64,000 nt of DNA from Mobula birostris (Eukaryota). The DNA lies in assembly GCF_030028105.1 (NCBI RefSeq), contig NC_092371.1:96127064-96191063 (forward strand), written 5' to 3'. The notes below the pieces were generated by a model, which searched no databases, was not told the origin of the DNA, and saw only the letters and a program-made list of their open reading frames with translations. How positions within the stretch are numbered: position 1 is the first letter of the stretch; the number at the start of each line of letters is the position of its first letter. The position numbers and the translations under genes were made by a program. This document shows, piece after piece, positions 3,076 through 30,543 of this stretch.

Positions 3076-4186
3076 TTCTACTCGGTTCGATTGTAGAAAC
3101 TCTGGGGATTTCCTTTGCTTTGTCTACTGGAGCAACCTCATGTCTTCTTTCAGCCATCCTAATTTCCTTCTTAAGTGCTCTCTTAGTGTCCTGAGAAGTA
3201 CATTGCTTAGACTCCATGTCATTTATATAAATCACAAACCGCGTAACCTTGTCAAAAACTCAATCAATGTAGTACGGCACTGCCTGCCACACACAAAGCC
3301 ATGTTGACTTTCGCTAATTGGGCTATGGGTTTCCAGATGCTCATATATCCTATTGCCAAGCGTTTTCTCCCGCAATTTCCTACAACTGACGTGGGGCTCT
3401 CCAGTCTATAGTTCTGAGGACTTTCTCTTGTTCCCTTCGTAAACAGAGGTATATCATTAATCACTCGTCAGTCCTCTGGGACTTCGCCTGTGGCTACAGA
3501 AGACACAAAGATACTGGTCAAGGCTCCAGCCATCTCGTTTTCTGACTCTTTTAATAACCAGGGATAACTCCCATCTGGCCCTGGGGACCTATATACCTTT
3601 ATACTCATTGGGAGGCCGAGAACCTCCTTCTTCTTAACCTCTAAATGTCCTCATGTATTTATACATTCAGCACTGCATTCCCTTGAAAAGATGGTTTCCT
3701 TTTAGTTATTTTGCATACATGTAGTCTTGCGTTACGTCTTCAGTAGCTTCACACGTCATATTCCTACAACAATGAACGCCAGATGTTTGAAATCTAAAGC
3801 AGAAACAGAACATGCTGGACACTCAGCCGCTCAAGCAGCATCTGTGGAAGAAGAAGCAGAGTTTACGTTTCAGATCCCACACCTGCCATCAAAATACTCT
3901 GATGAATTAAATTGCCAGTAATACTTTTCTTAAACAAGGGCTCCCTGCCCTGCTGAATATTCCCAGCATTTTCTGTGCTTAAGTTTAGCTTCATCTTTAC
4001 TGGTCCGAGTATGCCGTTCGGCATTTTGCAATGAACCGCAGTTGATCCTCTGTCTTGACAATATTTGCACAATGAGGGTACATGCTCATCTTGAGGAAGA
4101 TCCGCGAAGGCTTTCCCAATGATACACGTGATCTTGCACAATCTAGGCTCTTGTATTCACTTTCACCTCTCCTTACCCGTGTCTCT

Positions 4187-4462
4187 TGGGCATCTGGGTA
4201 GCGTAGCGGTCAGCGCAACACAACAACAAATTTCGAACTTTATTTCTGGGGCTGTGTGTAGGAAGCTGTTCGTTCTTCCCGTGAATCGCATCTGTTTCTT
4301 CCGGGTGCTTCGGTTTCCTCCCATATTTCAAAGACGTTCCCGTTACTAGATTAATTCCTCATCGTAAATTTTCCTGGGATTAGGCTCGTTTTAAATAGGT
4401 AGGTTGCTCGACGGTCTGGCTCGTTGGACTGGAAGGGCCTGTTCTGTGCTGTATCTCTAAAA
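4187..4462 (+). mobile_element. V-SINE (HE1-like); paralogous copy at 15281-15615
   Basis: Central TTCTTCCGGGTGCT(T/C)CGGTTTCCTCCCA V-domain motif and GGGCCTGTTC(T/C)GTGCTGTATCTC LINE-like tail. Confidence 0.75.
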
Positions 4463-4603
4463 CCTGAGAATGATGAGGTGTGCCATTCGTTTTCTCTTCA
4501 TCCTATGCCGGACATTTATTTTGTTCTCTCTGCCCTCCCTATCCTCTATACTTCAATCATTTACACTTTCTAATGAAAGGGCATTGAACTAAAATATTAG
4601 GAG

Positions 4604-4810
4604 TGTCAAGAAACCCCGTGACGGGAATAAAGAACCAGCAGAGATGGAAAACACTTCGAAGTCTAATATTGCTATAAACCAATAATATTTTTTAGTAACT
4701 ACGCAATACAGGAATATAAATGTAGATAAATCGAACAGCTTAGCAATGATTATATAAAAGTAAGTGTGGAATATAAATGCATGAAAAACCAAGCTTCTTT
4801 AAGTCTGGGG
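4604..4810 (+). mobile_element. Truncated LTR, same family as 10488-10908
   Basis: Begins TGTCAAGAAACCCCGTGACGGG...AAAGAACCAGCAGAGATGGAAAACAC, the reverse complement of the end of the 10488-10908 element; absent from paralog at ~15770. Confidence 0.65.
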
Positions 4811-4819
4811 ATAAAAAGA

Positions 4820-5460
4820 TACAGTGGATCTGGGGTTGAGAGGGTGAACAGCTTTAAGTTCCTTGGCATCAGCATCACCGAGGACCTCACGTGGTCTGTA
4901 AACACCAGCTGTGTGGTGAAATTGCAAAACAGCGCCTTTTACACCTCAGACAGGAAGAAGGTCGGTATGGGCCCCCAAATTCTGAGAACTTCCTACAGGG
5001 GCAGAATTGAGAACATCCTGATTGGCTGTATCACTGCCTTGTATGGGAACTATACCTCCCTTAATCGCAGGATTCTGCGGAGAGTGGTGCGGATAGCTCA
5101 GCGCATCCATAGTTGTGATCTTCCCATGATTCAGGACATTTAGGGTTAGGGTGTGAAAAAAGGACTCGACGGATCATTGGGGACCCGAGTTACCCCAACC
5201 ACAATCTATTCCAGCTAAAACCATCCGGAAAACTTTACCACAGCATAAAAGCCAGGACCAGCAGGTTCCGGGACAGTTTCTTCCACCAGACCATCAGACT
5301 GATTAACTCACGCTGATTTGAGTGTATTTCTATGTTACACTGATTGTTCTATTTCTTATAAATTATTATAAATTACTACGATTGTCCATTGCACATTTAG
5401 ACGGACCAGTTATGTAAAGAGTTTTACTCCTCATGTATGTGAAAGATGTAAGAAATAAAG
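4820..5460 (+). mobile_element. Rex1/Babar LINE 3' fragment
   Basis: ORF 4766-5143 contains VERVNSFKFLGISITEDLTWS and IENILIGCITALYGN, typical Rex1/Babar C-terminal motifs. Confidence 0.8.
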
Positions 5461-6882
5461 TCAATTCCATTGCAATTGGTAATTCAATCCAAAGTGCGCA
5501 TTATTAAACTTTGAAAGATTTTTGGGAACTACCTGTATGCCAGGCAGTTTAGATTAGTTTTTGCAGATATGCAGTCCTCTTTTATAGTCATTTAGTAATG
5601 TATGCATTAAGAAATGATACAATGTTCCTCCTATGTGATATCAGAGAAACACAAGACAGACCAAGACTGAAAAACTGACAAAAACCACATGATTATAACA
5701 TATAGTTACAACAATGCAAGCAATACCGTAATTTGACAGAAGAACAGACCATGAGCACAGTTAAAAAAAAGGCTCCAAGTCTCTCTAAAGTTCCAACATC
5801 TCACGCAGACGGTAGAATAAAGAAAACTCTCCCTGCCATGAGCTTCCAGCGCCGCAAACTTGCCGATGCAGCATTCTGGAAGCATCCGACCACAATCCGA
5901 CTCTCAGTCCGTCTGAAAAATTCGAGTCTCCGATCAGCCTTCCGACACCGAGCACCGAGAACCATCTCTGCCGAGCGCTTCGACCCCAGCCCCGACCGCC
6001 AGCAACAGGCAAAGGCAAGGATTTGGGGTCTTCCCCTCCGGAGATTCTCGATCGCACTGTAGCAGCGGCAGCGAACCGGGCATTTCAGAAGTTTCTCCAG
6101 ATGTTCCTTTGTGTTTCTTACGTCTGTCTCCATCAAATCAGGATTGTGCACGGCACCTATTTAACAAATACGATATCATTTTCACCGGAGAGGCCGCGCG
6201 CGCTGCGTCGCGCCGCGATCTTCTCCTTCCTTTTCTTTGGAATAGCAAATAAAACGCAGAAAGAACCCGTTGCAGAACCGAAAGGACGTCACCTAGCAAT
6301 AACTGTAGAGTGTGCCTTGTATCTTGGGCCGGGATCACCACTTGAAAACAGTGGAGACACAGTTGCTTGAGGGGTGTAGCAAAAAACTGAGTTGTATAAA
6401 GGGAAATATAAACTTTCCTAGATGATGAGTCCATAATCATATCTCCAGTCTCAGGCTGAGAATTTGCTACTAGGAACAGAAGTGAGAAGGAATCGGGCCC
6501 TTTTGTCCGAATTCCGACTTAGTGGCGTTTCAAGTACCCAGAAATGGCACCTTGGCACAGCCTGCTCCTCGTTCAACCACAAGCACGTAATATGCTGTCG
6601 ATGGTGTAATTCTCCAGCCTTTGGAGGCATCGTTATTAAATTCGTTCATAAAATCACTCATTTTTGAATATTAAGGCAAAGGCCAGGAACATGACGCTGA
6701 GGTCAAATATCAAGCAGAACTTGATGAGTGTCTGAACATGTCAGGAGGACAAAATGCCGTTTTACTCTTCCCAGTTTTATAGCTAATGACCGATACAACC
6801 AGAGCACGGCATCAGCTGCCCGTCGTCCGATTATACTCAACCACTGACACGCTAGATATACAGGTTACCAGAAGAATACAAT

Positions 6883-6888
6883 TTTATT
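6883..6888 (-). promoter_or_regulatory. Polyadenylation signal (AATAAA) of the minus-strand IgL C pseudogene
   Basis: TTTATT on + strand, about 170 bp downstream of the TAA at 7057-7059; mutated to AGTGAA in the paralog near 17270. Confidence 0.6.
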
Positions 6889-7056
6889 TTTTTGTAACAA
6901 AAGATTCTGGGTCATATTTACAAAGTGAAAGGCTTTCCTGCCATAATTCGAAGTACGGCTGTAGGAAATCCGCTTGCAAACAGGAAGAAAATATTCGTTG
7001 AATGTTCCTGTACCCGACCATAAATAACAGCGCGAACCCAGACGACCGGCTCCTCC

Positions 7057-7368
7057 TTACACGCAGCCTGATCTCTGGATGCTTCGTTTCCGCAGAGACT
7101 CGAGTATACCCCCACAAGTTCACTTTTCTTCTGAGTTCCACTCAGCGGCGGTCACCGTGAGGTAACTGCTGACGGTGTAGGTCTGGTCGCTATCCTGGAC
7201 GACTCGGGTTGTCTGGAGACCAGTCCACGACATTATGGTCCATTTCTCAGGCCACCTTCACCGGTCCAGGGGAAACGTTGTTCCACACCAGAGTCGCCAT
7301 CTGTCCTTCAGTGCTTTGTTCAGTCGCGGGTGGAGGAAAAGCAATCGAAGGGCTGCACAATTTTCCAC
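7057..7368 (-). pseudogene. Immunoglobulin light-chain constant exon, divergent type, pseudogenised
   Basis: Acceptor TTTTCATTCCAG|GT; translation GKLCSPSIAFPPPATEQSTEGQMATLVW-NNVSPGPVKVA*EMDHNV..(frameshift)..GLQTTRVVQDSDQTYTVSSYLTVTAAEWNSEEK*TCGGILESLRKRSIQRSGCV*. C1-set IgL motifs (SSYLT, EWNS, penultimate Cys); first Cys lost, core Trp is TGA. Confidence 0.9.
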
Positions 7369-7724
7369 CTGGAATGAAAAAGAAATGTCCATATTAAAGA
7401 ACAATAACAAATCGCGTGTCAGACATTTAATACTTGGTCGCTTGACCTGAGGCCACACCGATGGGAAGTTGCAGGTTTACGTCCCACACTGAAGACTAGT
7501 GCCAAACATGGACTGACATTGTAGACCGGTGCCGAATGTCTGTTAAACAATCGCCATTAGGTAGTTGCGGTAACCGTACATGACCTTTGGCAGTTATTTT
7601 CAAGGGAAGGAGGACAGAGAGATTATTGCTCTAAACAATATTTATAACTGAAAACTATCAACAAAATTAGCTGGCTACATTGAAATTACTGAGACCTTCC
7701 GGTGCTAGAATTGGCTCCAGCAGT

Positions 7725-7866
7725 NNNNNNNNNNNNNNNNNNNNNNNNNNNNNNNNNNNNNNNNNNNNNNNNNNNNNNNNNNNNNNNNNNNNNNNNNNNN
7801 NNNNNNNNNNNNNNNNNNNNNNNNNNNNNNNNNNNNNNNNNNNNNNNNNNNNNNNNNNNNNNNNNN
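7725..7866. other. Assembly gap (142 N)
   Basis: Run of N in the sequence. Confidence 1.
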
Positions 7867-8199
7867 ATATTTATTTTAATGTGGATTACCAGTTGTACAG
7901 GAACTATCAGTTTCACAGACAGACGTCGTCAGTTAAGTGCTTGACTATACAAGAAGACTGGACGTCGCTCTGCTGCATGGGTTTTAACAAAATGACCCTG
8001 GATATCTAAGCAAACATAAACCGCTGCCCAAACACCTACCAATTCGCGCGCGATCACCTACACGAGTATTCGCTCTTCTTAAGGCTTCGAACGAACTTTC
8101 TTCCTATCCCATGCAATGAAACCAGAAAAGGCGAGTTTTCAACAATCACCGTCTGCTGTGCATCCCTGATATAATAGAGACCTACAGTATGTAGTGAGG

Positions 8200-9570: not shown

Positions 9571-10194
9571 CCATGCGACCAATGCAATAGCTGATCGATA
9601 AACGCATTTATCACTGCATTGCGACCAACTCCCCAATTCTTCGGCCCATTTCGTCTATACCGACTAAAGAGTCTTCTTGAGCTGGACCCATTCACCGGCA
9701 TTTTCCGTGTATTTCTTTAAACATTTCCTATCTGCGCACATCTCCAAACGGTTTTAAAACTTCGTAATTGTTGCAGTGCCTACCAATTCCTCTGGCAGGT
9801 ATTTTAACATCGTCCCCTTTGATATTTCCCTCTCACCTTAAGCCCATCCAATTCAGTTTTTGGCACCGCGTCGATGGGAAATGGACCTTAGCCATTTACG
9901 CTATATATTCCCATCACTATGTACTAAACCTCTATAATGTCATATCAGCCCACTTGCGTCGAAGAAAAGCAGTCCCAAATTATCCCAGTCGCCCATTATA
10001 ATTCAAGACTGCCATTTCATGTTGTCAACTACTACCATGCCTACATCAACCATTTTGGTGACATCGATAAAACAGCCATGTAAATTTGGGAGCCGAGATT
10101 TCTCACGCACAAAACTATTTTAACTATTCCTAATTATTCATTTGCCTTTGCATATGCATATGGATCCTGTCTCGCAGAATCACCTGTAGTAATC

Positions 10195-10487
10195 TTCCCA
10201 ACACTAACGTTGGGCTCGCCTGCCTGTAATTCCGTAGCTTATCCTTAAAGTTTCTCTTAAATAAAGATGGAACATCAGCCAACCTATAGGTTTCCAAAAA
10301 CACAGCTGTGGCTAACGAAGATGCAAAAGTGTCTGCAAAGGTCCAGCAAACTGCACCCAAGCTTGCTACAATTTTTCGGAAATAGATAGCACGATCCCAG
10401 GAGTTACCCACGGCTATCCTCCTCAAAAATACAAATAACGATTTTGCATAATATCATTACCTTTCAGGGCATCACTGTGCCCGGCCT
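10195..10487. repeat. Block X (decayed CR1), paralogous to 28445-29072
   Basis: Shared CAGCAAACTGCACCCAAGCTTGCTACA and GATTTTGCATAATATCATTACCTTTCA.GGCATCACTGTGC. Confidence 0.85.
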
Positions 10488-11960: not shown

Positions 11961-12879
11961 TAACCTATGCTCTACTAACGTCAAGCTCACCGTCTGTAAT
12001 TGCCAAGCTTATTCTTGAGTGTTTCCTGAACAACGGAAGAAAATTAGCTACCCACCTATCCTCTGGCCTCTCATCTGAGGCTAAGGACATTTTAAATATG
12101 TTTGCTAAGTCCCTTGCACTTTCTCAACAGCCTCCCACAAGGTCCGAGAAAACTTCTTCAGCCCCTAGGGATATGTCCAACATAAGTTACCTCAAATAGT
12201 AAACCGACTCTTCTGTAACCCTCTTACGTCCATGAACACACTACTGTTTTGCCTCACTTAGTGTCCGTTTCTCGCGTAAATACAGATGTAACTCCACTAA
12301 TTACAGCCCTCCGGCCAGAATGAGTCCCTTCAACTACTATCCTCTGTCTTCGATGCGCAAATTGGTTCTGAATCCAAACAGCCAATTTGCCACGGACTCC
12401 ATGCTTCCTAATCTTCTGGGTTAGCTTCATATGACAGACTTTGTCGGAAGCCTTACTAAACCAGCATCCACTGCCCTACCCTCATCAATCTCTCTCTCGT
12501 AACCTTCTCGACAAACTCAATCAAGTTGGTAAGGCACGATCTACCATGCACAAAGCCATGCTGGCCTTTCCGAGTTAAGCTATGGGTTTCCAGATGCTCA
12601 TATATCTTATCCCTAAGCGTTTTCTCCCGCAATTTCCTACAGCTGACGTGAGGCTCTCCGGTTTACAGTCTCAAGGATTTTCCCTTGTTCCCTTCGTAAT
12701 TAGAGGTACAAAATTAGCCACTCACCACTCCTCTGGGACCTCATCTGTGGCTAACGAGGGCACAAAGATAATGGTCAAGGCCCCAGCCATTTCGTTTCCC
12801 GACTCCTTCAATAACCTGGGGCCCTATCTACCTTAATACTCATTAGGAGGCCTCACACATCCTCCTCCTTAACGTATTT

Positions 12880-14752
12880 GATTGGTAAGTTTATGGAGAA
12901 GATCCCTGAGACAGGATTTATGAATATTTGGAGAGGCATAATATGATTAGGAATACTCAGCGAAGCTTTGTGAAACGCAGGTCGTGCCTTACGCGACTGC
13001 TTGAATTTTTTGAGGATGTGACTAAACACATTGAAGAAGGCAGAGCAGTAGATGTAGTGTATATGAATTTCAGCAAGGCATTTGACAAGGTACCCCATGC
13101 AAGACTTATTGAGAAAGTAAGGAGGAATGAGATCCAAGGGGACATTGCTTTGTTGTTCCATAACTGGCTTGTCCACAGAAGGCAAAGAATGATTGTAGAC
13201 GGGTCATATTCTGCATAAAGGTCGGTCACCAGTGGTGTGCCTCAGGGATCTATCTGGGACGCCTACTCTTTGTGACTTTTATAAATGACCTGGATGAGGA
13301 AGTGGAGGGATGGGTTAGTAAATTTGCTGATGACACAAAGGTTGGGGATGTTGTGGATAGTGTGGAGGACCGTCAGTGGTTACAGCGGGATATTGATAGG
13401 ATGCACAGCTGGGCTGCGAAGTGGCAGATGGAGTTCAACCCAGATATGTGTGAGGTGGTTCATTTTGGTAGGTCAAATATGATGACAGAATATAGTATTA
13501 ATGGTAAGACCCTTGGCAGTGTGGAGCAGCAGAAGGATCTTGGGGTCCGAGTCCATAGGACACTCAAAGCTGCTGCGCCATGTGACTCTGTAGTTAAGAA
13601 AGCTTAAGGTACATTGGCTTTCATCAATCGTGGGTTTGAGCTTAGGAGCCGAGAGGCAATGTTGCAGCTATATAGGACCCTGGTCAGACCCCACTTGGAG
13701 TTCTATGCTCAGTTCTGGTCACCTCACTACATGAAGGATGTGCAAACCATAGAAAGGGTGCAAAGGAGATTTACAAGGATGTTGCATGGATTGGGGAGAA
13801 TGCCTTATGAGAATAGGTGTCAGGGCGCTGAAGCAGGGACCCAATCGCAGACCAAGTACTGTGCACACTGTGATATTTTCTGAGTAGCAAATCCAGAGGG
13901 GCAACAAAGTTGGTGTCAAAATTCAGGTGGAGATCAAAAATTCCAGAGAAATTCAAAAACCAGAATCAGGAAACAGGCAGAGTCGATATTCGGACGGACA
14001 GAGTTCAGATACGAATGCTGGAAAAGCTCAGGAAAACGCACTGGCACAGTTTGGCAACAAACAGGTGAAAACACAGGATTAAAATACACTGAGCAGTAAA
14101 CAGAGAGGCCGATGATAGGTGGAGAACAATGAGACACAGGTGGTAGCAAAACTGGTAAAAATGAGAAACAGGTGAAAAGTGGAGTATTCAGTAATACAGG
14201 GGCCGGAGTAGAGCAGGAGCGGGGACAGGAGCACTTGGGGCATGAAAACATACGCGAGCACATGGCAATATAAAACCACAGACTGACAGCTAGGGGGAAA
14301 ACACACAAAAAGACAAAGTTCAACTGGAGATACTGACAATAGGTTGACTGAACTCGGCCTTTTTTCCTTTGAGCGACGGAGGTTGAGGTGGCCTGATAGA
14401 GGTGTATAAGATGATGAGAGACATTGATCGTGTGGATAGTCAGGGTCATTTTCCCAGTGCTGAAATGGCTAGCACGAGAGGGCACAGTTTTAAGGTGCTT
14501 AGAAGAAGGTACAGAGGAGATGTCAAGGGTAAGTTTTTTTACGCAGAGCATGGTGAGTGCGTGGAATGGGCTACGGCGATGGTGGTGGAGGAGGATACGA
14601 TAGGGATTTTTAAGAGACTCCTGGACAGGTACGTGGAGCTCAGAGAAACAGAGGGTTTTGGGTAACCCTAGGTAATTTCTAAGGTAAGAACATGATCGGC
14701 ACAGCTTTTTGGGCCGAAGGACCTGTGTTGTGCTGTAGGTTTTCTGTGTTTC
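12880..14752 (+). mobile_element. 5'-truncated CR1 LINE (RT + 3' tail), interrupted by a solo LTR
   Basis: [32 protein letters not shown] motifs; absent from paralog A (3640-3660 is contiguous). Confidence 0.9.
13818..14338. mobile_element. Solo LTR nested in CR1, 5-bp TSD ATAGG
   Basis: TGTCAG...CTGACA termini; ATAGG at 13813-13817 and 14339-14343; removal restores CR1 text GAGAATAGGTTGACTGAACTCGG. Confidence 0.9.
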
Positions 14753-17474
14753 TATATTTACACTCAGCACTTTATTATTTTGAAAAGATGGTTTCCTTTT
14801 TGCACTTTTGCGTACATGTAATCTTCTGTTGCACCTCGCTAGGTTCCGACGTCATATTCGTACGACAATCAAAATGAATGTCAGATGCTGGAAATCTAAA
14901 GCAAAAACAGAACATGCTGGAGACACGGCAGCTCAAACAGGGTCTGTGGAAGGCGAAATTAGAGTTTGCGTTTCAGATACCAAACCTGCCATCAGGAATT
15001 CTGATCAATTGAATTGCCTCTTCTTATACCTAGGCTCCCTGCCTTGTTGACTGTTCCCAGGATTTTCTATGCTCAAGTTTAGCTGCACCTTTACTGTTCC
15101 GAGCATGCCGTTCGGCATTTCGCAATGAACCGCGGTTGATCCTCTGTCTTGACAATACTTGTACGATGCGGGGACATGCTTATCTTGAGGAAGATCCGCG
15201 AAGGATTTCCCATTTATTCATGTTAGCTGACTTAATCTAAGCTCTTGTATTCACCCACACCTCTCCTTGCCCGTGTTCCTGGGCATCTGTGTAGCGCAGC
15301 GGTCAGCGCAACGCTGCAAAAATTAAACAATTAAACTAATGTTTTAAATAAAATTAGTTGCTGAAACAAATCGGGGAGTACCATAGTTCGGACTTCACTT
15401 TCGGCGTGTGTAAGAGATTGCTTGTTCTTCCCGTGAACGCGTGGGTTTCTTCCGGGTGCTCCGATTTCCTCCCACCGTTCAAAGACGTTCCCGTTACTAG
15501 GTGAATTGGTCATCGTAAATTCTCCTGGGATTAGGCTAGTTTGAAATAGGTAGGTTGCTCGACAGTGTGGCTTGTTGGACCAGAAGGGCCTGTTCCGTGC
15601 TGTATCTCTCAATAAATAAAAACCTGTGGTTGACCACCTTTCGCTTGATGGAGTATGCCATTCGTTTTCCATTCATCCCATGCCGGACATTTACTTTGTT
15701 CTCTCTGGCCTCCCTATCCTCTATACTTCAATCATTTATACTTTCTAATGAAAGGGTATTGAACTAAAATGTTAAGGGTTATACGGAAAGTTGTCTGAAA
15801 CAGCATTTGCTGTTTTGATTAAATATTTTTCGACGACATGCACTTGGTATTTCTTTCTAAAGTGACCATTTTCAAGCTTTGAGAAAGATTTTTTTTTGAA
15901 AAATATCTCCATACCGCCTAGTTTTCGTTGGAGTACTAAATATAGCGCTGCAAGATCCTGTAGTGTAGCAGAACTGAAAGGATGTCACCCAGCATTACAC
16001 TGCAGAATGTGCCTTGCATCTTCGGCAAGATTCAGCCCTTCTAAACATTGGAGGCACGGCTGCTTGTGGGGTGTAGGGAAAAAGATGATTTGTATAAAGA
16101 GAAAAATAAGCTTTTCAAATATTTTAACTATTCGTTTGTTTGTTTGTATGTTTCAAGAAATAATTTAATTAAAACGTTAGTTTAATTGTCTAATAACATG
16201 CTCCAATTTTAATATATCTTACAAACATGTCAATTATTTTAATCGCAGGACATTCGGTAGTGTATTAAAAGTAACTGGGCATTGGCTTCCTGAAAGCCGA
16301 ACGGCCAAACCAACAGCCCACAAGGAACATAGAACACAGAACGCAGAATAGTACAGCACAGTACAGGCCTTTCGGCCCACCCTTAAACCCTGCCTCCAAT
16401 ATAACCTCCCCCCACCTTAAATTCCTCCATATACCTGTCTAGTAGTGTCTTAAATGTCTCTTAAAGGAAGACAAATGCTGTTTAACTCTTTCTCAGGAGA
16501 GAATGTGCGTACACAAATGGCAACGTCATTGTGGAGTTTAACTATCGCTACTGAAAAAGACCATAAGACATACGAGCAGAATTAGGCCATCTGGCCCATG
16601 GATGGAGGGATGGAGATTTCATCAAAAACATGGAGAGATTTCATCAACTATTCATACACTAGTTCCAGAATCGCCATTTGTGAAGAGATCGCGTAGTCGG
16701 GCCCTGTTTTATCTAGAATTTACGAGAATGAGGGGAGGTCGCGGTCAAATTTAAAACTCAAACAAATCTTAACATGCCGAAAGAAGAGAAGATACTTTCC
16801 TAGATGAGGAGACCACAATCATGTCTCCAGTTTCAGACTGAGAACTTGCTACTAGAAACAGAAGTGAGAAGGAATCAGGGTCTTTTGCCGGAATTCTGAG
16901 TTAGGGGCGTTACGTCATGTTCCCAGAAATGGCACCTCGACACAGCCTGCTCCGCACGCAACCACGCTCACTTAATGTCCTGTCGATGGTGTAATTCTGC
17001 AGCCTTTGGAGGCATCGTCATTAAATTCATTCATACAACCACGGATTTCTCAATATTAAGGCAAAGGGCAGGAACGTGTCGCCGACGTCGAATATCAACC
17101 AGAACTTGTAAATGTCTGAAAATGTTAAGAGGACAGAATGTTTTATTCCTCTTCCCAGTTTTATGGTTAATATCCGATACAACGAGGGCACGGCATCAGC
17201 TGCCCCTCCTCTGATTATATTCGACGGCTGGCATGCAAGATATACAGGCTGCCAGAAGAATATAATTTCACTTTTTTGTAACAAAAGATTCCAGGTTACA
17301 TTTAGAAAGTGAAAGTTGTTTTTTCCCTGCCATAATGTAAAGTACAACTGTAGGAAAGGCGCTTAAAAGTCGACGGTAGGAAAACCGCTTCCAAATAGAA
17401 AGGGTATAATCGTGGAACGTTGCTGTGCCCGACCGGAAATAACTGTGCGCACCCATCCGCCCGGCTCCCCTTTT

Positions 17475-17485
17475 ACGCAGCCTGA
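17475..17485 (-). pseudogene. Terminal remnant (SGCV codons) of a second copy of the divergent IgL C exon
   Basis: ACGCAGCCTGA identical to 7061-7071, at the end of the collinear 3'-flank block; homology stops at a Penelope fragment. Confidence 0.7.
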
Positions 17486-17630: not shown

Positions 17631-18611
17631 CATCAGCATTATGTGCAATGCTGTATGACGTGAGCGATCACGGTATTATCTATGAAATGGATGTTCTTCT
17701 CAATTTTTTTCCCACAGAAGTGGTTTGACATTAACTTCTCCTGGGCAGTATCTTTTCAAGTCGAGTAAACACAACCATTGTCAATACTCTTCAGAGATTG
17801 TCTGCCTGGCGTCAGTGGTCGCATAACCAGGACTTGTGATATGTAACAGCTTCTCATACGACCACACACCGCCTGCTCGCCTGCTTCACGTGACATTGAT
17901 CCTGGGCTAAGCAGGTGTGACACACTACCTTAGGATGACCCACCGGCTAGCGGTGGGATGGAGCGCCTTACACCTCCTTAGGTACAGACGTATCTTCACC
18001 CCGCCACGGCTATATACATTATATCGTATCAGGCACCTGTGGTTACAAAAACATGTAATACACCATACTGGCCTAAGGTTGGCAGAATTTATAATGAACC
18101 AGCCTCGGCACCAGCTTAATCGTTTGATTCGCTTTCCATTATTCACAACACGCAATAAGCTCTCTGGTCGGTTCAATACCTTTATCAATTTTCCTCCTGA
18201 ATATCTTCAGGAATGTGAATGATTTGGGTGCTCCTGGAAAACAGGCTTTCTAAAATCATTGTAAACCCTTTATAACTGTTTGGCAGTGAGTTTTCTAAAA
18301 GTATACAGACAATTGGCTTGGACTTTATTAAAAACCCTACAGATCAGTTAATGACTGCCAATATTTTTTTGTTCATCTCTTGCTTTCGAAAATCTCGAAC
18401 ACACCATCTTTAATGATGGTGCGAGCTTCGCCTATTTGAAATATAGTGTGCAACTGAATGGACAAGAAGACGTGCTCTTTATCTAAAACACATTGGCGAA
18501 ATACACAACTCGAAATACATAGCTTATCTGGCTAACTACTTGAAATTAATTTGAGACAGGAAAAAATTAGCAACTTGTGATTGGTGTCAAGGTGTCACTC
18601 CGTTTGAACTG

Positions 18612-18624
18612 ATTTGCATAAATA
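18612..18624 (+). promoter_or_regulatory. Ig promoter octamer ATTTGCAT with adjoining TAAATA (cluster 1)
   Basis: ATTTGCAT at 18612-18619, 117 bp upstream of the leader ATG; same spacing in cluster 2; the octamer is the canonical IgL promoter element. Confidence 0.9.
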
Positions 18625-18728
18625 GGGAACACGCGCTGCCACCTCGTCAGAGGATTCAAAAGCGAGCTGAACAGTTCAGACGCCACTTAACCGCGGCACC
18701 TGGTGTGAGCTTCACTCAATTAATTACA

Positions 18729-18767
18729 ATGTCTTGGTGGATTCGTATGGTCAGTACGCTGGTGTTC
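18729..18767 (+). pseudogene. IGL: IgL leader exon (cluster 1), splice donor deleted
   Basis: ATG-SWWIRMVSTLVF, then 22 bp missing relative to cluster 2 (including GTGAGT); unspliced read-through reaches TGA at ~18837. Confidence 0.9.
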
Positions 18768-18880
18768 CATGGACATTATATTGAATCTCGAATACCGTTC
18801 AACGATATTCTACTCGCACTTCTGGTATTACTCGAATGATTAATCTCGGTACATTGTTTCTTCCCTCTGAATGTTTCGAG

Positions 18881-19225
18881 ATATCAACGCGGAAATTGCA
18901 ATGAATCACCCACCTTCGAAATCCACGTCTCCAGGGCAGAACGTGCAAATACCCTGCACCTTGTCTGGAACCTCTTTAGGAAGTAGCATTGTTTCCTGGT
19001 ACCAGCAGATTCCCGGAAAAGTTCCTCGGTATCTGTTTTACTATTATTCGGGGAGCAGCGTTAACAGAGGCTCCGGAGTTCCGAACCGTTTCGACGGCTC
19101 GATATCAGGCAACACGGCAACATTGACAATATCGAGCGTCCAGTCGGAGGATGCGGCAGACTATTACTGTGCTGTGTGGAAAAATGCTTTAATCTTGGGC
19201 AAAGGAACGAGGCTGGCAATTGGCA
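18881..19225 (+). CDS. IGL: Germline-joined lambda-type VJ exon (cluster 1; open frame, probably non-functional)
   Basis: EIAMNHPPSKSTSPGQNVQIPC...WYQQ...EDAADYYCAVWKNALILGKGTRLAIG; no RSS between V and J; donor GTAAGT at 19226; acceptor weakened to GAG; FGxG is LGKG. Confidence 0.93.
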
Positions 19226-21134
19226 GTAAGTAAAATATCAATTCAATGCGCTTAGCTTCTTGGTACTTACCTGAACAAGAATTAAATTTCTGTCGTTTCA
19301 TGGTTGCTTCGAAACAAAAGGTGGCATTTTTCAGATGTCCAACCACGAGTAACGCACCTTTGTCAATTTAGTTGAACATGCGCGCCTGAAGCGCTAAATG
19401 CCCCTCTGTTTTTTTTTAATTGGCGCTGGCTTTGTTGAAGATGAACTAATAATTTTTAAACCAGGTGTAGAATTAGTCCAAACGTTATTAAATGAGATTA
19501 ATCCTGCATTGCCGAATTTTGATTACATCAATGGTTTTGCTGGGGGGATCCACCTTTGCTTATGACACCACTTGCTGCTGATGCCCATCAGAACCATAGG
19601 ATAACTGCTAGCCACTGATCACTGAACCTTTGAGGGTTCTTTAAAATCATAAACTTGAATAGATGAAGAAAGATAGATAATGAAGGTGACTGGTTCCAAA
19701 GCAAGAAGCTATAATCTTTATGAATTTTCCACAGTATCTGGTTAGCTCCGTCTCGCTGAACATTTTTTATCTGATTTTTTTAAATCATCTGACACCCTGT
19801 GCAAGTTATTTGTTTGTCTCCTTACATTTTCTAAAAATAACAGAACTGCTACCATATTTACAACCTGGCACATGGATGATGATAAACACGGCAGTTAATG
19901 GAAATTCTTTAAGTGCCCGGAGAAACCGAATGGCAACAACAACGGATCTATTAGTCCATCAATTCTAGGGAAACTCTTTGAGATGTTACTGAGTAGACTA
20001 ACTGCTAGATTAATTATTGTATATTTAACTGTTTCTCATCGCCAGTTTGAGAAGTTAAAGGTATGTATTAAACCGCCAGGAGATGGTAAAACAATCCTTG
20101 AGTGTTTTGTTGTTTAGAATTAAATTTGAATTTGATTGAAATCTGAAACAAACTTGCGCCATGTAACACCACAACAAAGTTCGAAAATTAGCAGGTAGAT
20201 ACTAGAATGGAAATTTATTAGCAGACACCTTTTAGTATTTTATGTTTTCAACTGTTGGTATTACTTCTGTTTTAATTTGCAATGTCAATATGTGGAAGTA
20301 TAGAAGACAGTCTTTTCTGTCAATTGTGAAACTGAAATTGTGTGGTAATTTAAAATGCGTGTGGAAATAAACCTTCAAGACGACCAGAACTTTATCGTAG
20401 GATTTGAAGACATGCGTCGCTCAATGACTGGAGAGGTATATTGGCGAGTGTTAGGGCCTTGTGCTTTGGTTCTTGGTAGTGTCAAACCATGCCCAGTAGG
20501 TGAAAGGGTAAAGGCCAGACTAAGAGTGGCTTATTGGACATGCAGGATCCGGGGTTCAGTTCAGAGCTAACAGCCATGGCACGTCAAAGTTTGTTGCAGA
20601 AATAGCAGTGAAGAATCCTTCTATATCTGTTTGCGATGGCTTTGATAGGCAGAGATTGAAGATCTTAATTACTGACCTATACGACAGCGAAATAACGGCC
20701 ATTAAGTCAGTGGAATTAATCTATCATTAAAGTTTTCTGTGCACCAAAAATGGAACCACGGAACAGCGAGCGTTTCAACTTTACACGAGAAATATAAGTT
20801 AAAAATATGAAAGTTAACCACGTTGAGCCATATTCAGAGCCATATCAGATGAATGCATTTGCATTCCCTCTCTTTACCACCTAGGTCCTGAACATTGTAA
20901 GAAAGTGGTTTCCTCGCTGGTGAGTGTCAGGAGAAAGATCCGCTACACTCCACAAACCAGATTTGAATTACTTTCTTCAAGCAGAAAAATAATATTTCGG
21001 AAACAAAGCGTATAAGTTTCAACATGTATGTTAAACTTTCCAAAAGTCATTTACTATACAAGCAGCCTGTAATTTAATATTGTGCAAAGCGAAGGCTGTA
21101 TTCCGATGGCTAAGATGCATTAAATATACTATTC

Positions 21135-21215
21135 CAGGGATTCCCAACCTGGGGTCTACACATCCCTCTGGTAATGGCAGGGGTCCGTGGCATAAAAAAG
21201 GTTGAGAACCCGCTG
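21135..21215. mobile_element. hAT (Charlie-type) MITE in the J-C intron
   Basis: Termini CAGGGATTCCCAACC / GGTTGAGAACCCGCTG; degenerate 8-bp TSD TACTATTC / TGCTAATC with central TA. Confidence 0.7.
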
Positions 21216-21679
21216 TGCTAATCCCCGAGTTTAAGCAAAGCATGAATTAGACTTCCGTCTGTTGTCTTGATGACTGAAGATTTGAATGAAGAGAATCTGT
21301 CCATGGTAGAAGTAGAGACAGTTGGCTTAGGTGCAAAGGAAGCCAAAATTCTCAGTCAGGTATAACCTCAGATTTTTAGTCAACCTGAATCTAATAATGC
21401 AATGCTTGAGAGACCGATTAAAACCCGGGCCGAAATCGTTCATTTTACGCCACTGCACATATTGCGCTTAGGGTCACAAAAACACTTATCACGTGAGATT
21501 TCAGCTGGCATTTTTTTTTCACGACCAATTTAACATATTGAAACAGGTAAACGGAAGAGAGGTATTTATTCATTAAGGTGAATAAATGCATGAAATACCA
21601 AATGTATTTTAAACCAAAGCGATGTTTTAACAGAAACGGTTTCCCAACCTGTAGTAAACTAGCACCTTGTTTTAAACAG

Positions 21680-22002
21680 ATCCTCGGAGCCCCGCCGTCA
21701 CCGTCCTCCGGCCGTCAGCGGAAGAAATCACGGGAAAAGGCACAGTGACACTGGTGTGTTTGGTGAGATGTTTTAATCCGGGCGCTGTGAACATTGAGTG
21801 GACCGTGGACAGACGTACGAAAAGCGATGGCGTTGAAACGAGCCCTGTCCAACAGGAAACGGACAACACGTTCAGTGCGAGCAGTTACCTGACTCTGCCA
21901 GCCTCAGAATGGAGAACACACGAGCGTTACTCCTGTGTGGTTAAACACGAGGCTCTAGCAAACCCGTTTGAGGCAATGGTCGAGAGATCCATGTGTATCT
22001 AA
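21680..22002 (+). CDS. IGLC: Lambda-type (type II-like) IgL constant exon
   Basis: Acceptor TTTTAAACAG|AT, phase 1 matching the J donor; (N)PRSPAVTVLRPSAEEITGKGTVTLVCLVRCFNPGAVNIEW...SSYLTLPASEWRTHERYSCVVKHEALANPFEAMVERSMCI*; resembles shark type II lambda C as I recall it. Confidence 0.95.
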
Positions 22003-22058
22003 AACGATATTTCAAAATTAATCAAGATGAAAATCTTATTTTCTCCGTCTTTTTCTTC

Positions 22059-22064
22059 AATAAA
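22059..22064 (+). promoter_or_regulatory. Polyadenylation signal of the lambda C exon
   Basis: AATAAA 56 bp after the stop codon. Confidence 0.75.
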
Positions 22065-24207
22065 ATATATTTTGAAACATTATTATTTTGCAGATAAGTA
22101 TTTGAGCTCTGAGGCGTCATTTAAGTTTTATCAGTTTCAAAATGTCATTCCATTAGATTGGTAGCATTGTTAAGTGTATCTCCAATGCTAATTAATCTCA
22201 GTTAAATGCATCCCTAGATGTTTATCAAAATGATTCTGGCCTGAAGATTGCATTCTTGATTCTTGACAGACTGCTGATAATTTCGGCAGAGCTACCCAAT
22301 AACATTAACGATCCATTCTGATTTGCAACATAGTTTCATGACTTTTCTTTCGAGTGCAGAATAAAAGAAAAATATAATTTAAATCTCCCTTTAATGATAT
22401 TGCCTGTGTGTACTCACAGACACACAGTCATCTGTCATGAAGGAACACATTCAATTAAGGACGATTGACAAATATAGACGGGGCGGAATTGGTGGGTCTG
22501 GGACGATCCTCAGATTGTGTGAAGTGCAGCAGATTTTGTTTTCAGAATAAGTGCGTGTTTATGTGACTGAATATATAGCGCCCATATTCTAGGGCACTTA
22601 AATCAAAGGGAGGCAATGCCATCGATATACATAAAAAAAACCATTTTCGGCTTGAAAGTGAGATGCCGAGCTGAAGGCTGTAGCTTTCAGATAATAGGTT
22701 TGGGTATTCGGGGCTGAAAATAAAAGATAATATTCTTTTCAGGGTGTACCTTTAATCTGTAGTTTCTTTAGAAATTTTATCGGTGCCCAAGTAGATTGCG
22801 ATTGAAATATCTTTAAAAGTTTCAAAGGAGTCGAGACGTGACAGGAGACAGGAGACCGGAATTCTGGTCAGGATGCTTCTAATATTATTCTTTCGTATGT
22901 CCACAACTTGAACTTGCTAAAAAGTATAACAGGTGATAGTTATATTACATTGGAGTATTTTTTTAAAAATCTCAATTTTAATTTCATTTAAACTGAAGGA
23001 GCAAGTTAATATTTTCCGACCCAGAAGAAAAAGGCAAAACAACCATGGTTATCAAGCTCTTCGTTTTCAATTCCAGTGAAATACACGAACTGTATATACC
23101 CACCTGAGAGCAAATTGGAACTGTAACTGCCAGTTCATTCAAACGCTCAAAACGTATAGGTACAGTTCTCGAACACTACTGCACTGAAGCAGGCACTTTG
23201 GCCCATATGGGCTGTGCTGAACTGTTACACGGACTGGCACCAGACCATTGTTCTCCATACTCTCCCATCCATGCACCTATCCAAATTACTCTTAAATGTT
23301 AAAATAGGACCCCCACCCAATCCTTTCGCTGGAAGCTCCTTCTGCACTCCCACCACACTCCAGGTAAAGATATTCCCCTCATGTTAAAATTAATCTTTTA
23401 ATCTTTCACCCATAACCCATGATCTCTAGTTCTAATTTCACCCAGCCTTAGTGGAAAAGCCCAGCTTGCATTTACCCTCTCCATGCCTCTCATAATTTTG
23501 TACACCTCCATCAAATCGTCACTCATTCTCCTTTGCTCCAGGGAATACAGTCCAAATCTATTCAACTATTCCCTATAATTCAGGTTAAGTGTCAGTGACT
23601 TTCTTGTAAATTTTCTTTGCATTCTTTCAATCTTATTGATATCGTTCCTGTGGGCAGGTGACTAGATCAACATACAATACTCCAAGTAAGGCTTCGCGAA
23701 CGTCTTAAACAACTCGAGGTTTCATCCCAACTCCTGTGCACAATATTTACTTTGATCTACGAAGGCCAATATGCCAAAAGCTCTCTTTAGGCCCTATTTA
23801 CCTACGGCGATACTTTGAAGACATGATGGACCTGCATTCCTTCTGTTCTACCGTATTCCTCAGTGCCCTGCCGCTCACCGTGTAAGTCCAACCTGGTTTG
23901 CCCTCCCAAAGTGCAATACTCACCATCTGCCTTTTTCAGCCCATTTTTTCCATCTTCTCCAGATCCCGCTATAAGCTTTAATAGCCTTACTCGCGCCAAC
24001 TACGTCCCCAGTCTCGGTGTCATCCACAAACTTGATGACGTAGTTTAGCACATCATGATTCGGATCATTGATATAGATGATGAACAACAACAGACATAAT
24101 ACCCATCCCTGAGGTACACCACTGGCCACAGGCCTCCACTCAGAGAGGCAAACATCTACTAGCACTCTCTGGCGAGACCAATGTCTAATCCAAATTTCTA
24201 CCTTATA

Positions 24208-28890: not shown

Positions 28891-29410
28891 ATCGTGTCAG
28901 CTTCTCATTATCTTGTCTGCAAAGGAACCAGCAAACTGCACCCAAGCTTGCTACATGTCTTGGGATACAGATAACAAGATCCCGGGATTTATTCACCGTT
29001 GTCCTCTTCAAAAATGCAAACAGGGATTTTGCATAATATCATTACCTTTCAAGGCATCACTGTGCTCGTCCTTGAGTTTGCCCGCTTCAATGACTTTTCC
29101 TCTTTAAAGTAGAATAGAAGCATTCATTTAGGTCCTCCTTTGTCTCGACAATCAAATTAATTCCAAAGTGGACCTTTTCTCTCCCCAGTTGCTTTTTTTT
29201 TGTTCTTTATATATTTAAAGAATCTCTTATGATCAACTTACCGGTCAAGATGTCTTCTGTCCCATTTCGCTCCTGATTTCGTGATTAACTGGACTCCAGC
29301 AGTCCTTATTTTCCACAACAGTTTTTGCTACATGCCAGTTGGCTATTCCTTTCTCTTCAGCAGACTGCAATCTCCCTCCATCAGTTATGGCTCCTGAATT
29401 CTACCTACTG

Positions 29411-30543
29411 ATGTTCCTTCAGGCTACTTTGATTAATGTTACTGTAAGAGCAAATAGAATTCGCATCATGTACGTTTTTTTCCAATGTCCGTAGGGTTTA
29501 TGTCACTTTCACTGCTATATTGGCCCTGAATTATCTGTATCTCATTTTCAAAAGCTTCCGACTTGCCAAACTTCACTATGCCTACTAACAGCTTCTCCGA
29601 ATTGATCTTTGAGAGTTTTGGTCTAATCCCATCAAATTTTGCTTTGCTCCAATTTCGGCCTTGAAATTGAGAACTAACCGTGTCTCTTTTTGAAAACTCC
29701 TTTAAAATCTAATGGAATTATGGCCACTGGCTCCAAACGGCCCCCACCAGTCACTTGCCAAGTCTCATTTCCTAAGAGGAAGTCGATTCTGGTGCTGGAA
29801 TAGAAACAATGGGTCTCTTTAACTAAATTCCATATTTAGTTTCAGGATACGGTGCTACTGCAGAATTCTCATCATCTGTTGAAGATTGTTACTCACTGAC
29901 GGGCAGTGTCGCAGCTTTTCTTTCCATCTACCTCGTGTTGTCCTGGCCATGTCAGTGTTTATCCCGATATTGTAAGTGAAATGCCTTTGTTTTTAACTCA
30001 CCATACTCGTATCCTTGTAGTATGTGAAAGGAAAATGTACAGAAATGAATTTTACTATTGAAAATTCGAGGAGATAATAATTGGAGAAAGTAAAGGAGAT
30101 TTACTCTGTACCTTATTCGTGCACTAATTTATTCCGTGGCCTTTGAAACACTCACAAAAAAGTACCTCAAGAATCAGATGCAAAATAAATTACCCTCCAC
30201 ACAACTCTGTCAAATACTCCCAGGTCAGGAAAAGTGTGGTTTAGCTATTGGAAAATAACCTGAAACGTGCTGCATCGATTACTGTGGAAACATATCGATT
30301 ATATGAAGTTGAGGAGGGATGTGTCAGCCACGCAACCCTATGCAGCAGATAATGTCTCCAAATAATCGCCCGAATCCAGTAATTTATCCTTTCAAGATAA
30401 CCTGGATGATTGCTGCAAGTGTAAATTAGTTTATTGCAAATTATTATATGTTCCTTCAGGCTACTTTGATTAATGTTACTGTAAGAACAAATAGAATTCG
30501 CATCATGTACGTTTTTTTCCAATGTTCGTAGGGTTTATGTCAC
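29411..30543 (+). repeat. 96-bp direct repeat pair (29411-29506 and 30448-30543)
   Basis: ATGTTCCTTCAGGCTAC...GGGTTTATGTCAC, two mismatches by eye. Confidence 0.9.

What the first reader, a model, noticed from the sequence alone, without database searches (positions are those of the whole stretch)
6883..7368. Hidden second IgL isotype: divergent constant-exon pseudogene on the opposite strand
Seen: a splice acceptor, a 312-nt phase-1 exon with C1-set IgL motifs ending RSIQRSGCV*, and a downstream AATAAA; stops and a frameshift hide it from the ORF track. By eye it is only about one-third identical to the lambda C at 21680, whereas the two VJ paralogs are about 92% identical in DNA. Known: cartilaginous fish have several IgL isotypes (kappa, lambda, sigma, sigma-cart, lambda-2) in separate mini-clusters. 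Inference: this is a different isotype or deep lambda subtype (lambda-2 is a candidate), and the duplicated unit carried two IgL types transcribed divergently.
Basis: partly seen in the sequence, partly recalled or inferred. Interest (0 to 1): 0.78.

Follow-up and report, generated by a model that had tools for sequence, protein, structure and literature searches.

The report
Dead light-chain exon, duplication by-product
This is a real but long-dead antibody light-chain constant exon from a second lambda-like gene lineage that still has working copies in rays and sharks; it sits without any variable exon because a tandem duplication of the neighbouring lambda gene cluster cut its parent gene in the intron.

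Summary
On the minus strand, 7368-7057 is a 312-nt phase-1 IgL constant exon with an acceptor AG and the ancestral AATAAA. It is disabled by two stops, a frameshift, a Cys-to-Trp change and two in-frame deletions. It is 34% identical to the window's lambda C.

It is not classical type II lambda. Nesting it there is rejected (p-AU 5e-18). It belongs to an elasmobranch-wide lambda-like lineage that I call group A. Group A has intact, germline-joined genes in Mobula, stingrays, sawfish, an electric ray and many sharks. All are auto-annotated "lambda-1 light chain-like" and all are linked to the lambda array. The nearest relative is M. hypostoma XP_062929544 (66%).

Comparison with sawfish explains the missing V. 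There a lambda cluster and an inverted group A gene lie tail-to-tail. The window is collinear with lambda cluster, spacer, inverted C exon and J-C intron, then jumps to the next lambda cluster about 126 nt before the group A VJ exon. So the orphan exons are by-products of a tandem duplication that ended in that intron.

All lesions are shared with a second species, and exon and flank diverge equally (3.0% vs 3.3%).

The lambda-2 idea is unsupported and could not be tested. The deep status of group A is unresolved. An earlier scan note (s1-145616) reports two similar orphans 13 kb upstream of the window.

The parts
7057..7368 (-). Pseudo constant exon (psi-C) of the group A-i lambda-like lineage; 312 nt, phase 1, ends in TAA at 7059-7057
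   Evidence: DNA identity to sawfish C exons: 74.7% to A-i, 72.8% to A-ii, 62.9% to type II over only 140 nt.
7369..7370 (-). Splice acceptor AG (ttccAG|GT)
   Evidence: A contig of run X10 leaves the genome exactly here.
7283..7285 (-). Lesion: TGG (Trp) where the first Ig-fold Cys should be, followed by a 2-codon deletion
   Evidence: Alignment to P0036, P0033 and P0038; coordinates.
7247..7249 (-). Lesion: TGA at the invariant core Trp
7219..7225 (-). Lesion: frameshift (fits a 2-nt deletion) between ...NVVD and GLQTT...
   Evidence: The orthologous contig of organism B has no indel here.
7120..7122 (-). Lesion: TGA at the Tyr of the Y-x-C motif; a 3-codon deletion lies further 3'
6883..6888 (-). 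Ancestral poly(A) signal AATAAA
   Evidence: Conserved at the homologous position in the sawfish group A-i gene and mutated in copy B.
6832..7056 (-). 3'UTR of the pseudo-exon
   Evidence: Part of the block 6832-7716 that aligns to sawfish 10,220,363-10,221,314 at 67%.
7371..7716 (-). Retained 3' end of the group A-i J-C intron, up to the N run at 7725-7866 (not filled)
9635..10486 (-). Further piece of the A-i J-C intron in unit A (partly repetitive)
   Evidence: Aligns to sawfish 10,222,014-10,222,896 at 65.8% over 913 nt.
3691..6818 (-). 3' flank of psi-C, homologous to the spacer between the sawfish lambda and A-i genes (unit A)
   Evidence: Collinear blocks 3691-4154 and 6412-6818.
17194..17485 (-). 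Copy B remnant: the last few codons (...SGCV, stop lost) plus the 3'UTR of the same exon; the rest is deleted
12872..17202 (-). Unit B spacer, homologous to the sawfish lambda/A-i intergenic region
28916..31427 (-). Unit C: distal part of the A-i J-C intron, ending about 126 nt short of where the A-i VJ exon lies in sawfish
   Evidence: Aligns to sawfish 10,222,740-10,225,214 at 65.7% over 2616 nt.
31418..31427 (.). Tandem-duplication junction: A-i intron on the left, upstream region of the next lambda cluster on the right
   Evidence: Intron homology ends at 31427. Similarity between units C and B starts at 31418, matching 17631.
18011..23170 (+). Context: type II lambda cluster B (VJ 18898-19224, C 21682-21999), collinear with sawfish lambda gene XP_051888545

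Best explanation
The stretch is a non-functional relic of the constant exon of a second lambda-like light-chain gene, which I call group A, subtype A-i.

In the ancestor, as in sawfish today, an inverted A-i cluster (germline-joined L-VJ exons, a roughly 4-kb intron and a C exon) lay tail-to-tail beside a type II lambda cluster.

In the manta lineage a segment was duplicated in tandem. It ran from upstream of the lambda cluster, through the spacer and the inverted A-i C exon, and ended inside the A-i J-C intron. Every new unit therefore received a C exon with its acceptor, 3'UTR and poly(A) signal, but no V, J, leader or promoter.

With nothing to splice to and no selection, the copies decayed and were partly deleted:
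- Unit A lost its lambda cluster.
- Unit B lost the 5' part of psi-C and the intron.
- Unit C lost the exon.

Shown: lineage membership, the lesions, collinearity with sawfish, the junction, the shared lesions and the neutral rate.

Inferred: the order of events, and that the exon was never expressed as protein after the duplication.
For: Lineage:
- An unbiased HMMER search with a 33-aa piece found a 244-aa basking-shark light chain at 69% identity.
- Best blastp matches are intact batoid genes at 56-62%, against 38-42% for type II.
- In the careful ML tree psi-C is sister to the M. hypostoma and Hypanus A-i genes (99/86) inside a batoid group A clade (100/97). Type II is separate (96/96) and holds the window's own C.
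- AU tests reject psi-C inside batoid type II (lnL difference 55.5, p=5e-18) and with group C (p=0.0009).

Anchors for type II:
- Sandbar-shark lambda.
- Sawfish XP_051887747, the 'IgLL' of PMC12227049.
- Horn shark WKK30313.1, 'lambda light chain'.

Architecture:
- DNA homology to the sawfish A-i locus covers the intron, exon, 3'UTR and several kb of flank.
- Sawfish order and strands are lambda(+), A-i(-), A-ii(+).
- The window is collinear with lambda cluster, spacer, inverted C exon and intron. The jump to the next lambda cluster is at 31418-31427.
- No group A V, J or leader is in the window.
- Copy B keeps only the exon's 3' end.

Decay:
- Six lesions.
- An orthologous contig in organism B shows 19 substitutions, no indel and none at a lesion. 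Divergence is 3.0% in the exon and 3.3% in the flank.
Against: - The tree rests on about 100 alignable residues, and psi-C is a long branch (0.46 changes per column).
- The looser constraint, psi-C with type II as a whole, is only borderline (p-AU 0.055).
- Part of the intron homology (sawfish ~10,222,0xx-10,222,9xx) overlaps a repeat that occurs several times in the window.
- The duplication junction is seen once in this window (unit C). In unit B a later deletion has removed the intron side.
- I could not read the Mobula loci of the intact genes or the two other orphan exons reported upstream of the window.
- One contig of a run guessed to be RNA joins antisense lambda V sequence to the psi-C acceptor. 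So the exon may not be transcriptionally silent.
Confidence: 0.8

Rival explanations
1. Group A, and hence this exon, is an isotype-level lineage older than the split of cartilaginous and bony fish. It could be the lambda-2 orthologue that was searched for in vain in cartilaginous fish. The manta orphans would then be relics of a fifth isotype.
For: - Group A and type II C regions are only 43% identical within Mobula, which is as far apart as separate isotypes.
- Group A has its own two V families.
- Forcing type II with coelacanth and tetrapod lambda, apart from groups A and C, is not rejected (lnL difference 10.4, p-AU 0.14).
- Guselnikov et al. predicted that lambda-2 was present in the gnathostome ancestor.
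Against: - The best tree joins A, C and type II against coelacanth lambda, tetrapod lambda and sturgeon kappa (94/92).
- No gar, bichir or teleost protein is among the 120 listed relatives of the group A C region. Coelacanth lambda-type chains and a sterlet kappa are.
- Group A genes lie inside or beside the lambda array in every species seen, which fits local duplication.
- No lambda-2 anchors could be fetched.
Confidence: 0.1
2. The exon is retained because it serves as the terminal exon (acceptor plus poly(A) signal) of a non-coding transcript. That transcript would run antisense through a neighbouring lambda V exon and promoter, with a possible role in cluster accessibility.
For: - Run X10 (guessed RNA, organism A) has a 152-nt contig that reads antisense lambda V FR1, ...TTTCGAAG, joined to GTGGAAAATTG..., which is the exon from 7368.
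- The V antisense strand continues AG|GTGGGT in the genome, a good donor, and the exon is preceded by ttccAG.
- The acceptor AG and AATAAA are intact in this copy.
Against: - It is a single contig at depth about 2, and the run's RNA status is only a guess.
- The two sites share a 6-nt microhomology (AGGTGG), so template switching or a DNA junction in another unit would explain it equally well.
- The V part differs at 2 of 30 positions from the nearest V in the window.
- Two other runs of the same study show nothing.
- Exon and flank diverge equally between species, and copy B lost both the acceptor and the AATAAA.
Confidence: 0.1
3. Each unit once held a complete, working, divergently transcribed group A cluster, and the V-J parts were lost later by independent deletions.
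For: - Deletions are frequent in this array; units A, B and C each lack different parts.
- Intron homology reaches to within about 126 nt of the VJ position.
Against: - In unit C the intron homology stops within about 10 nt of where the shared lambda-upstream sequence of units B and C begins (31418-31427). This is the signature of one junction inherited by the units, not of independent deletions.
- No V, J or leader trace of group A type is anywhere in 64 kb.
Confidence: 0.07
4. It is just a very diverged pseudogene copy of the ordinary type II lambda C exon.
For: It lies in a type II lambda array, and pseudogenes drift.
Against: - 34% identity to the local lambda C against 66% to group A.
- AU rejection at p=5e-18.
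- The flanking intron and 3' flank are homologous to the sawfish group A locus, not to the lambda locus.
Confidence: 0.01

Closest known systems
Intact group A-i light-chain genes: Mobula hypostoma XP_062929544 (P0036), Hypanus sabinus (P0038), Pristis pectinata XP_051888544 (P0033); RefSeq name 'immunoglobulin lambda-1 light chain-like'
   Same: - Same C lineage by tree.
- Shared motifs: GGKL start, ATLV., NN.SP, EMD.N, QTY..SSYLT, EWNS, TCG, SIQ.SGC.
- Same poly(A) signal position.
- Homologous intron and 3' flank.
   Different: - The intact genes have a germline-joined L-VJ exon pair 2.5-4.4 kb upstream and an open frame.
- The window copy has no V and six disabling lesions, and is only 62-66% identical.
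Classical elasmobranch type II lambda (NS3): sandbar-shark lambda, sawfish XP_051887747, horn shark WKK30313.1, and the window's own cluster at 18898-21999
   Same: - Lambda-like V and C.
- Germline-joined clusters.
- Same chromosome and the same array; sister lineage in the best tree.
   Different: - A separate clade (96/96).
- 34-43% C identity within the manta genus.
- Different V families.
Defective C-lambda exon of the spotted gar (Guselnikov et al. 2018, PMC5985310)
   Same: A lone, broken light-chain C exon that records a light-chain type no longer expressed from that place.
   Different: In gar it marks an isotype lost from the species. Here the lineage is still functional elsewhere in the congener M. 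hypostoma (A-i) and in both Mobula species (A-ii), and the orphan arose by truncating duplication.
Lambda-2 isotype of ray-finned fish (Guselnikov et al. 2018)
   Same: A lambda-like paralogue distinct from 'true' lambda.
   Different: There is no sequence evidence of orthology. No ray-finned-fish lambda-2 is among the listed relatives, and RSS type cannot be read because group A genes are germline-joined.

Membership tests
Immunoglobulin light-chain constant exon (C1-set) | Single exon with a phase-1 acceptor, about 105 codons, its own stop and a nearby poly(A) signal | tested here: met
   Acceptor 7370-7369, exon 7368-7057, AATAAA 6888-6883. The layout matches the sawfish gene.
Immunoglobulin light-chain constant exon (C1-set) | Match to the C1-set profile | tested here: met
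   PF07654 E=2.5e-6 on a 35-aa piece; the other pieces are too short or too decayed to score.
Immunoglobulin light-chain constant exon (C1-set) | Intact fold core (Cys...Trp...Cys) and an open reading frame, meaning a functional gene | tested here: not met
   First Cys changed to Trp, core Trp changed to TGA, a frameshift, and the Tyr of Y-x-C changed to TGA. The second Cys and the C-terminal Cys are kept.
Classical type II lambda (NS3) of elasmobranchs | C domain groups with expert-named lambda anchors | tested here: not met
   It lies outside the 96/96 type II clade. Nested placement is rejected at p=5e-18. The loose sister-type constraint gives p=0.055.
Group A lambda-like lineage (my working name) | C domain nests within the clade of P0010-P0033, P0036-P0038 | tested here: met
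   99/86 with the Mobula and Hypanus A-i genes; 100/97 for the batoid group A clade.
Group A lambda-like lineage (my working name) | Genomic context homologous to an intact group A gene | tested here: met
   Collinear intron, exon, 3'UTR and flank with the sawfish A-i locus.
Group A lambda-like lineage (my working name) | Own germline-joined L-VJ exons upstream of the C exon | tested here: not met
   No group A V, J or leader is on the minus strand in 64 kb. Intron homology ends at a duplication junction.
Lambda-2 (Guselnikov 2018) | C and V cluster with gar, bichir and teleost lambda-2 | not tested
Indirectly, none is among the 120 listed relatives.
Lambda-2 (Guselnikov 2018) | Lambda-type RSS arrangement | not testable with these tools
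   The orphan exon has no V or J. The intact relatives examined are germline-joined.
Kappa (type III / NS4) | Partner V region of kappa type | tested here: not met
   V regions of intact group A genes have lambda-like framework 3. The best solved-structure matches of full P0036 are predominantly lambda chains. The shark kappa anchor L16765 was not available, so no tree test was done.
Sigma / sigma-2 (type IV / type I) | Groups with expert-named sigma or sigma-2 sequences | tested here: inconclusive
   Indirect only. The sawfish accessions used as sigma-2 and sigma in PMC12227049 do not match any of the seven sawfish proteins I looked up. I could not fetch the two sequences themselves.
Processed (retro-copied) pseudogene | Lacks intron and native flanks | tested here: not met
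   The native J-C intron end and the 3' flank are retained.

The most novel reading that the evidence does not exclude
Group A, together with the shark-only group C, is a light-chain lineage of isotype rank that the four-isotype scheme for cartilaginous fish does not name. It might be the lambda-2 orthologue, or a lineage near the kappa/lambda split. It has been hidden under automatic 'lambda-1-like' labels, and the manta array preserves its relics. A weaker add-on: the orphan exon is reused as the last exon of an antisense transcript through a lambda V exon.
Probability: 0.12. Interest if true: 0.7.

Novelty: new member of a known kind. Interest (0 to 1): 0.35.

Why it matters
The exon itself is an ordinary pseudogene. 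Two things around it have some value.

First, it gives a clean, base-level example of how minicluster antibody loci grow. A tandem duplication took a whole lambda cluster plus half of its inverted neighbour, and this explains orphan C exons without invoking a lost isotype.

Second, following it up showed that elasmobranchs carry at least three linked lambda-like C lineages: type II, group A with two V families, and a shark-only group C. Reviews list a single lambda, and genome annotation gives all three the same label. In the manta genus the group A and type II C regions are as far apart (43%) as separate isotypes.

Anyone annotating light-chain repertoires in sharks and rays should separate these lineages. 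Whether group A bears on the open lambda-2 question can now be tested with named accessions.

Tried and rejected
- **Kappa hunch.** My first idea, from the ...SIQRSGC tail, was kappa. I dropped it. Solved-structure matches of the piece and of the intact relative are predominantly lambda, and the partner V regions are lambda-like. C-terminal KRS.C also occurs in coelacanth lambda-type chains and in sterlet kappa, so it looks ancestral.
- **Word-indexed search with the 106-aa lambda exon.** It was defeated by the length filter. The one hit was a shark lambda fragment filed under Aeromonas.
- **Search with the sterlet kappa C region.** It returned no separate shark kappa set.
- **ESM Atlas.** Lambda and kappa clusters scored equally, so it was uninformative.
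- **Searching papers for group A peptide motifs.** Nothing relevant.
- **Guselnikov supplements.** No hit for the shark, skate or genus names I searched, and I opened only the primer table.
- **PMC7094790** (Criscitiello and Flajnik 2007) is not held.
- **DNA of the Mobula and cloudy-catshark group A loci.** Not available.
- **RSS typing.** Impossible, because the bamboo-shark and sawfish genes are germline-joined.
- **Head-to-head pairing of intact genes with lambda clusters.** Not seen. There is no other Ig exon within 10 kb in sawfish or bamboo shark, and the sawfish pair is tail-to-tail at 13.6 kb.
- **Expression.** No run on record as RNA holds the exon. The single X10 contig is ambiguous.
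- **Not run.** I ran no structure or complex prediction because nothing in the claim depends on one.
- **N run.** The N run at 7725-7866 was left as it is.

Full report
**1. The observation**

On the minus strand there is a polypyrimidine tract and AG at 7370-7369. A 312-nt exon follows (7368-7057), whose first two bases complete a codon (phase 1). It has a TAA at 7059-7057 and an AATAAA at 6888-6883.

Read in pieces, it gives (G)GKLCSPSIAFPPPATEQSTEGQMATLVWNNVSPGPVKVA / stop / EMDHNVVD / frameshift / GLQTTRVVQDSDQTYTVSSYLTVTAAEWNSEEK / stop / TCGGILESLRKRSIQRSGCV / stop.

The 35-aa middle piece alone hits Pfam C1-set at E=2.5e-6. The window holds one intact lambda C exon (21682-21999, C1-set E=4e-25) and no other full copy of either C. 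Identity between the two is 34%. The two VJ exons are 91.7% identical in DNA.

**2. What lineage it belongs to**

- A word-free HMMER search of 1.8 billion representatives with the clean 33-aa piece gave one light-chain-sized hit at 69% identity. This is P0010, a basking-shark protein.
- Searching with its C region returned 142 relatives.
- The pseudo-exon, joined with X at each break, matches intact batoid proteins best: M. hypostoma P0036 at 62% by BLAST and 66% by global alignment, sawfish P0033 at 60%, Hypanus P0038 at 58%, Narcine at 56%. Classical lambda scores 38-42%.
- A careful ML tree of 69 C domains recovers three elasmobranch clades:
  - type II lambda (96/96), which includes sandbar-shark lambda, Squalus chains and the window's own C;
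  - group A (88/97);
  - a small shark-only group C (99/91).
- The pseudo-exon sits inside the batoid part of group A (100/97), as sister to the M. hypostoma and Hypanus A-i genes (99/86).
- AU tests:
  - nested in batoid type II is rejected (lnL difference 55.5, p=5e-18);
  - with group C is rejected (p=0.0009);
  - the loose constraint 'with type II as a whole' costs 19.9 lnL but is borderline (p=0.055).
- Type II is tied to expert nomenclature by three anchors: sandbar-shark lambda, sawfish XP_051887747, used as 'IgLL' in PMC12227049, and horn shark WKK30313.1, 'lambda light chain'.

**3. What group A is**

- Its intact members are 240-258 aa chains with one of two V families: A-i (E[IF]TLTQ...GWW...FGGGTKLTV) or A-ii (...SQPPSVST...FGTGTKLT). 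Both have lambda-like framework 3.
- The best solved-structure matches of a full chain are predominantly primate lambda chains.
- In bamboo shark and sawfish the genes are germline-joined. The literature states the same for lambda in all species studied.
- Every species carries group A and type II on the same chromosome-sized contig.
- Accession order places group A next to or between type II genes in horn shark, bamboo shark and sawfish.
- No skate or chimaera member was among the 120 relatives listed.
- The sawfish accessions used as sigma-2 and sigma in PMC12227049 match none of the seven sawfish proteins I looked up.
- Reviews and recent papers recognise four isotypes with one lambda. The 2026 VGP preprint did not separate light-chain types in cartilaginous fishes.
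- I found no paper that names group A, but my literature access is partial.

Deep relationships are not resolved by 110 columns. The best tree joins A, C and type II (94/92). The alternative, type II with coelacanth and tetrapod lambda, is not rejected (p=0.14). Guselnikov et al. report no lambda-2 in cartilaginous fish despite an intense search. I could not fetch lambda-2 anchors, so that idea is untested, and nothing positive supports it.

**4. Why the exon is an orphan**

No group A V, J or leader exists on the minus strand of the window. The exon is also not an isolated fragment. DNA homology to the sawfish A-i locus covers about 350 nt of J-C intron, the exon, the 3'UTR with its AATAAA, and several kb of 3' flank.

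On the sawfish chromosome the order is:

| Gene | Strand | Coordinates |
|---|---|---|
| Type II lambda | + | 10,203,955-10,206,965 |
| A-i | - | 10,220,582-10,225,831 |
| A-ii | + | 10,238,468-10,240,680 |

Laid on that map in the same orientation, the window reads as follows:
- **Unit A:** spacer, psi-C, A-i intron (3691-10486).
- **Unit B:** spacer and the 3' end of psi-C (12872-17485), then lambda cluster B (18011-23170).
- **Unit C:** the distal A-i intron (28916-31427, reaching sawfish 10,225,214, which is 126 nt short of the A-i VJ exon). This is followed at once by the upstream region and VJ of lambda cluster C (31809-33111, matching sawfish 10,203,244 onward).

The similarity between units B and C begins at 31418, matching 17631, which is exactly where the intron homology ends.

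The simplest reading is a tandem duplication. Its unit ran from upstream of a lambda cluster to a point inside the J-C intron of the inverted neighbour. Each unit therefore inherited half a gene. Later deletions removed different parts of different units.

Within a unit the lambda cluster and psi-C are tail-to-tail, as in sawfish. The head-to-head appearance comes from the junction with the next unit.

**5. Age and selection**

- The flanks of units A and B are 79-82% identical.
- Manta-to-sawfish identity in this region is 65-75%.
- A second organism, probably the congener, has an orthologous contig covering 6750-7358. It has 19 substitutions and no indel, and none of them falls at a lesion. 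Divergence is 3.0% in the exon and 3.3% in the flank.
- So the exon was already dead before the two species split, and it evolves like non-coding DNA.
- Functional A-i C regions are 81-90% identical among Mobula, Hypanus and sawfish, while psi-C is 62-66% identical to them.

**6. A loose end**

In run X10 (organism A, RNA by guess only) one 152-nt contig at depth about 2 matches 7370-7295 perfectly. It then continues into sequence that is the antisense of a lambda V exon FR1, with 2 mismatches in 30 nt to 18916-18945.

The V antisense strand offers AAG|GTGGGT and the exon is preceded by ttccAG, so canonical splicing would give exactly this join. The two sites also share AGGTGG, so a template-switch chimera or a DNA junction in another unit would explain it equally well. 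Two sister runs show nothing, and no run on record as RNA holds the exon. I treat this as a lead only.

**7. Verdict**

It is partly wrong or unsupported: lambda-2 is unsupported, and the unit did not carry a second, divergently transcribed gene.
- The exon is a new, dead member of an annotated gene family.
- The more useful results are the duplication mechanism and the finding that 'lambda' in elasmobranchs is at least three linked C lineages.
- The species label (manta ray) comes from other notes of this scan. My data fit it: both C exons nest among myliobatiform sequences, and Mobula proteins are the nearest relatives of psi-C.
- An earlier scan note (s1-145616) reports two similar inverted orphan C exons 13 kb before this window, which I could not read.

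Noticed in passing
P0001: A 125-aa fragment filed as 'hypothetical protein [Aeromonas veronii]' (NJI29836.1, on a 652-bp contig) is a shark type II lambda J-C fragment. It sits next to sandbar-shark lambda in the tree, so it is contamination in a bacterial assembly.
   Followed up: partly
P0034, P0035, P0039, P0040: A third lambda-like C lineage, group C, with its own V family (...CTVHGISLSK...). It was seen only in sharks (Mustelus, Heptranchias, Stegostoma, Rhincodon) and is sister to group A (88/86).
   Followed up: partly
P0030 / P0031, Narcine bancroftii: Two predicted chains with different V families (A-i and A-ii) have almost identical C regions. Either one C exon serves two VJ exons (a mini-translocon or gene-model isoforms), or there has been recent gene conversion. 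In sharks the A-i and A-ii C regions also cluster by species (Heterodontus, Mustelus), which suggests concerted evolution.
   Followed up: no
window 7260-7403 in run X5: In organism B the 5' end of the exon and the acceptor region are covered by several extra, more diverged contigs, with summed depth 17-34 against about 5 elsewhere. This fits further paralogous orphan copies in that genome.
   Followed up: no
window 18898-19224 and 32690-33016: The germline-joined lambda VJ of unit B has LGKG where the J motif FGxG is expected, while unit C has FGKG. Unit C has no C exon in the window. These V regions are only about 52% identical to other Mobula type II V regions, so they form a distinct V family.
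   Followed up: no
window 1323-2035, 9635-10486, 11783-12196, 12465-12800: A repeat of about 400 nt that also lies in the sawfish A-i J-C intron (L002 ~13000-13390) occurs at least four times in the first 13 kb of the window, in both orientations. Other repeats shared with the sawfish spacer occur near 10971-12067, 23246-25100 and 28488-28908.
   Followed up: no
one search hit list: No skate (Amblyraja, Leucoraja, Rhinoraja) or chimaera protein falls in group A, although many skate type II genes are listed. Group A may be lost in skates, which would explain why it was missed in the classical skate studies.
   Followed up: no
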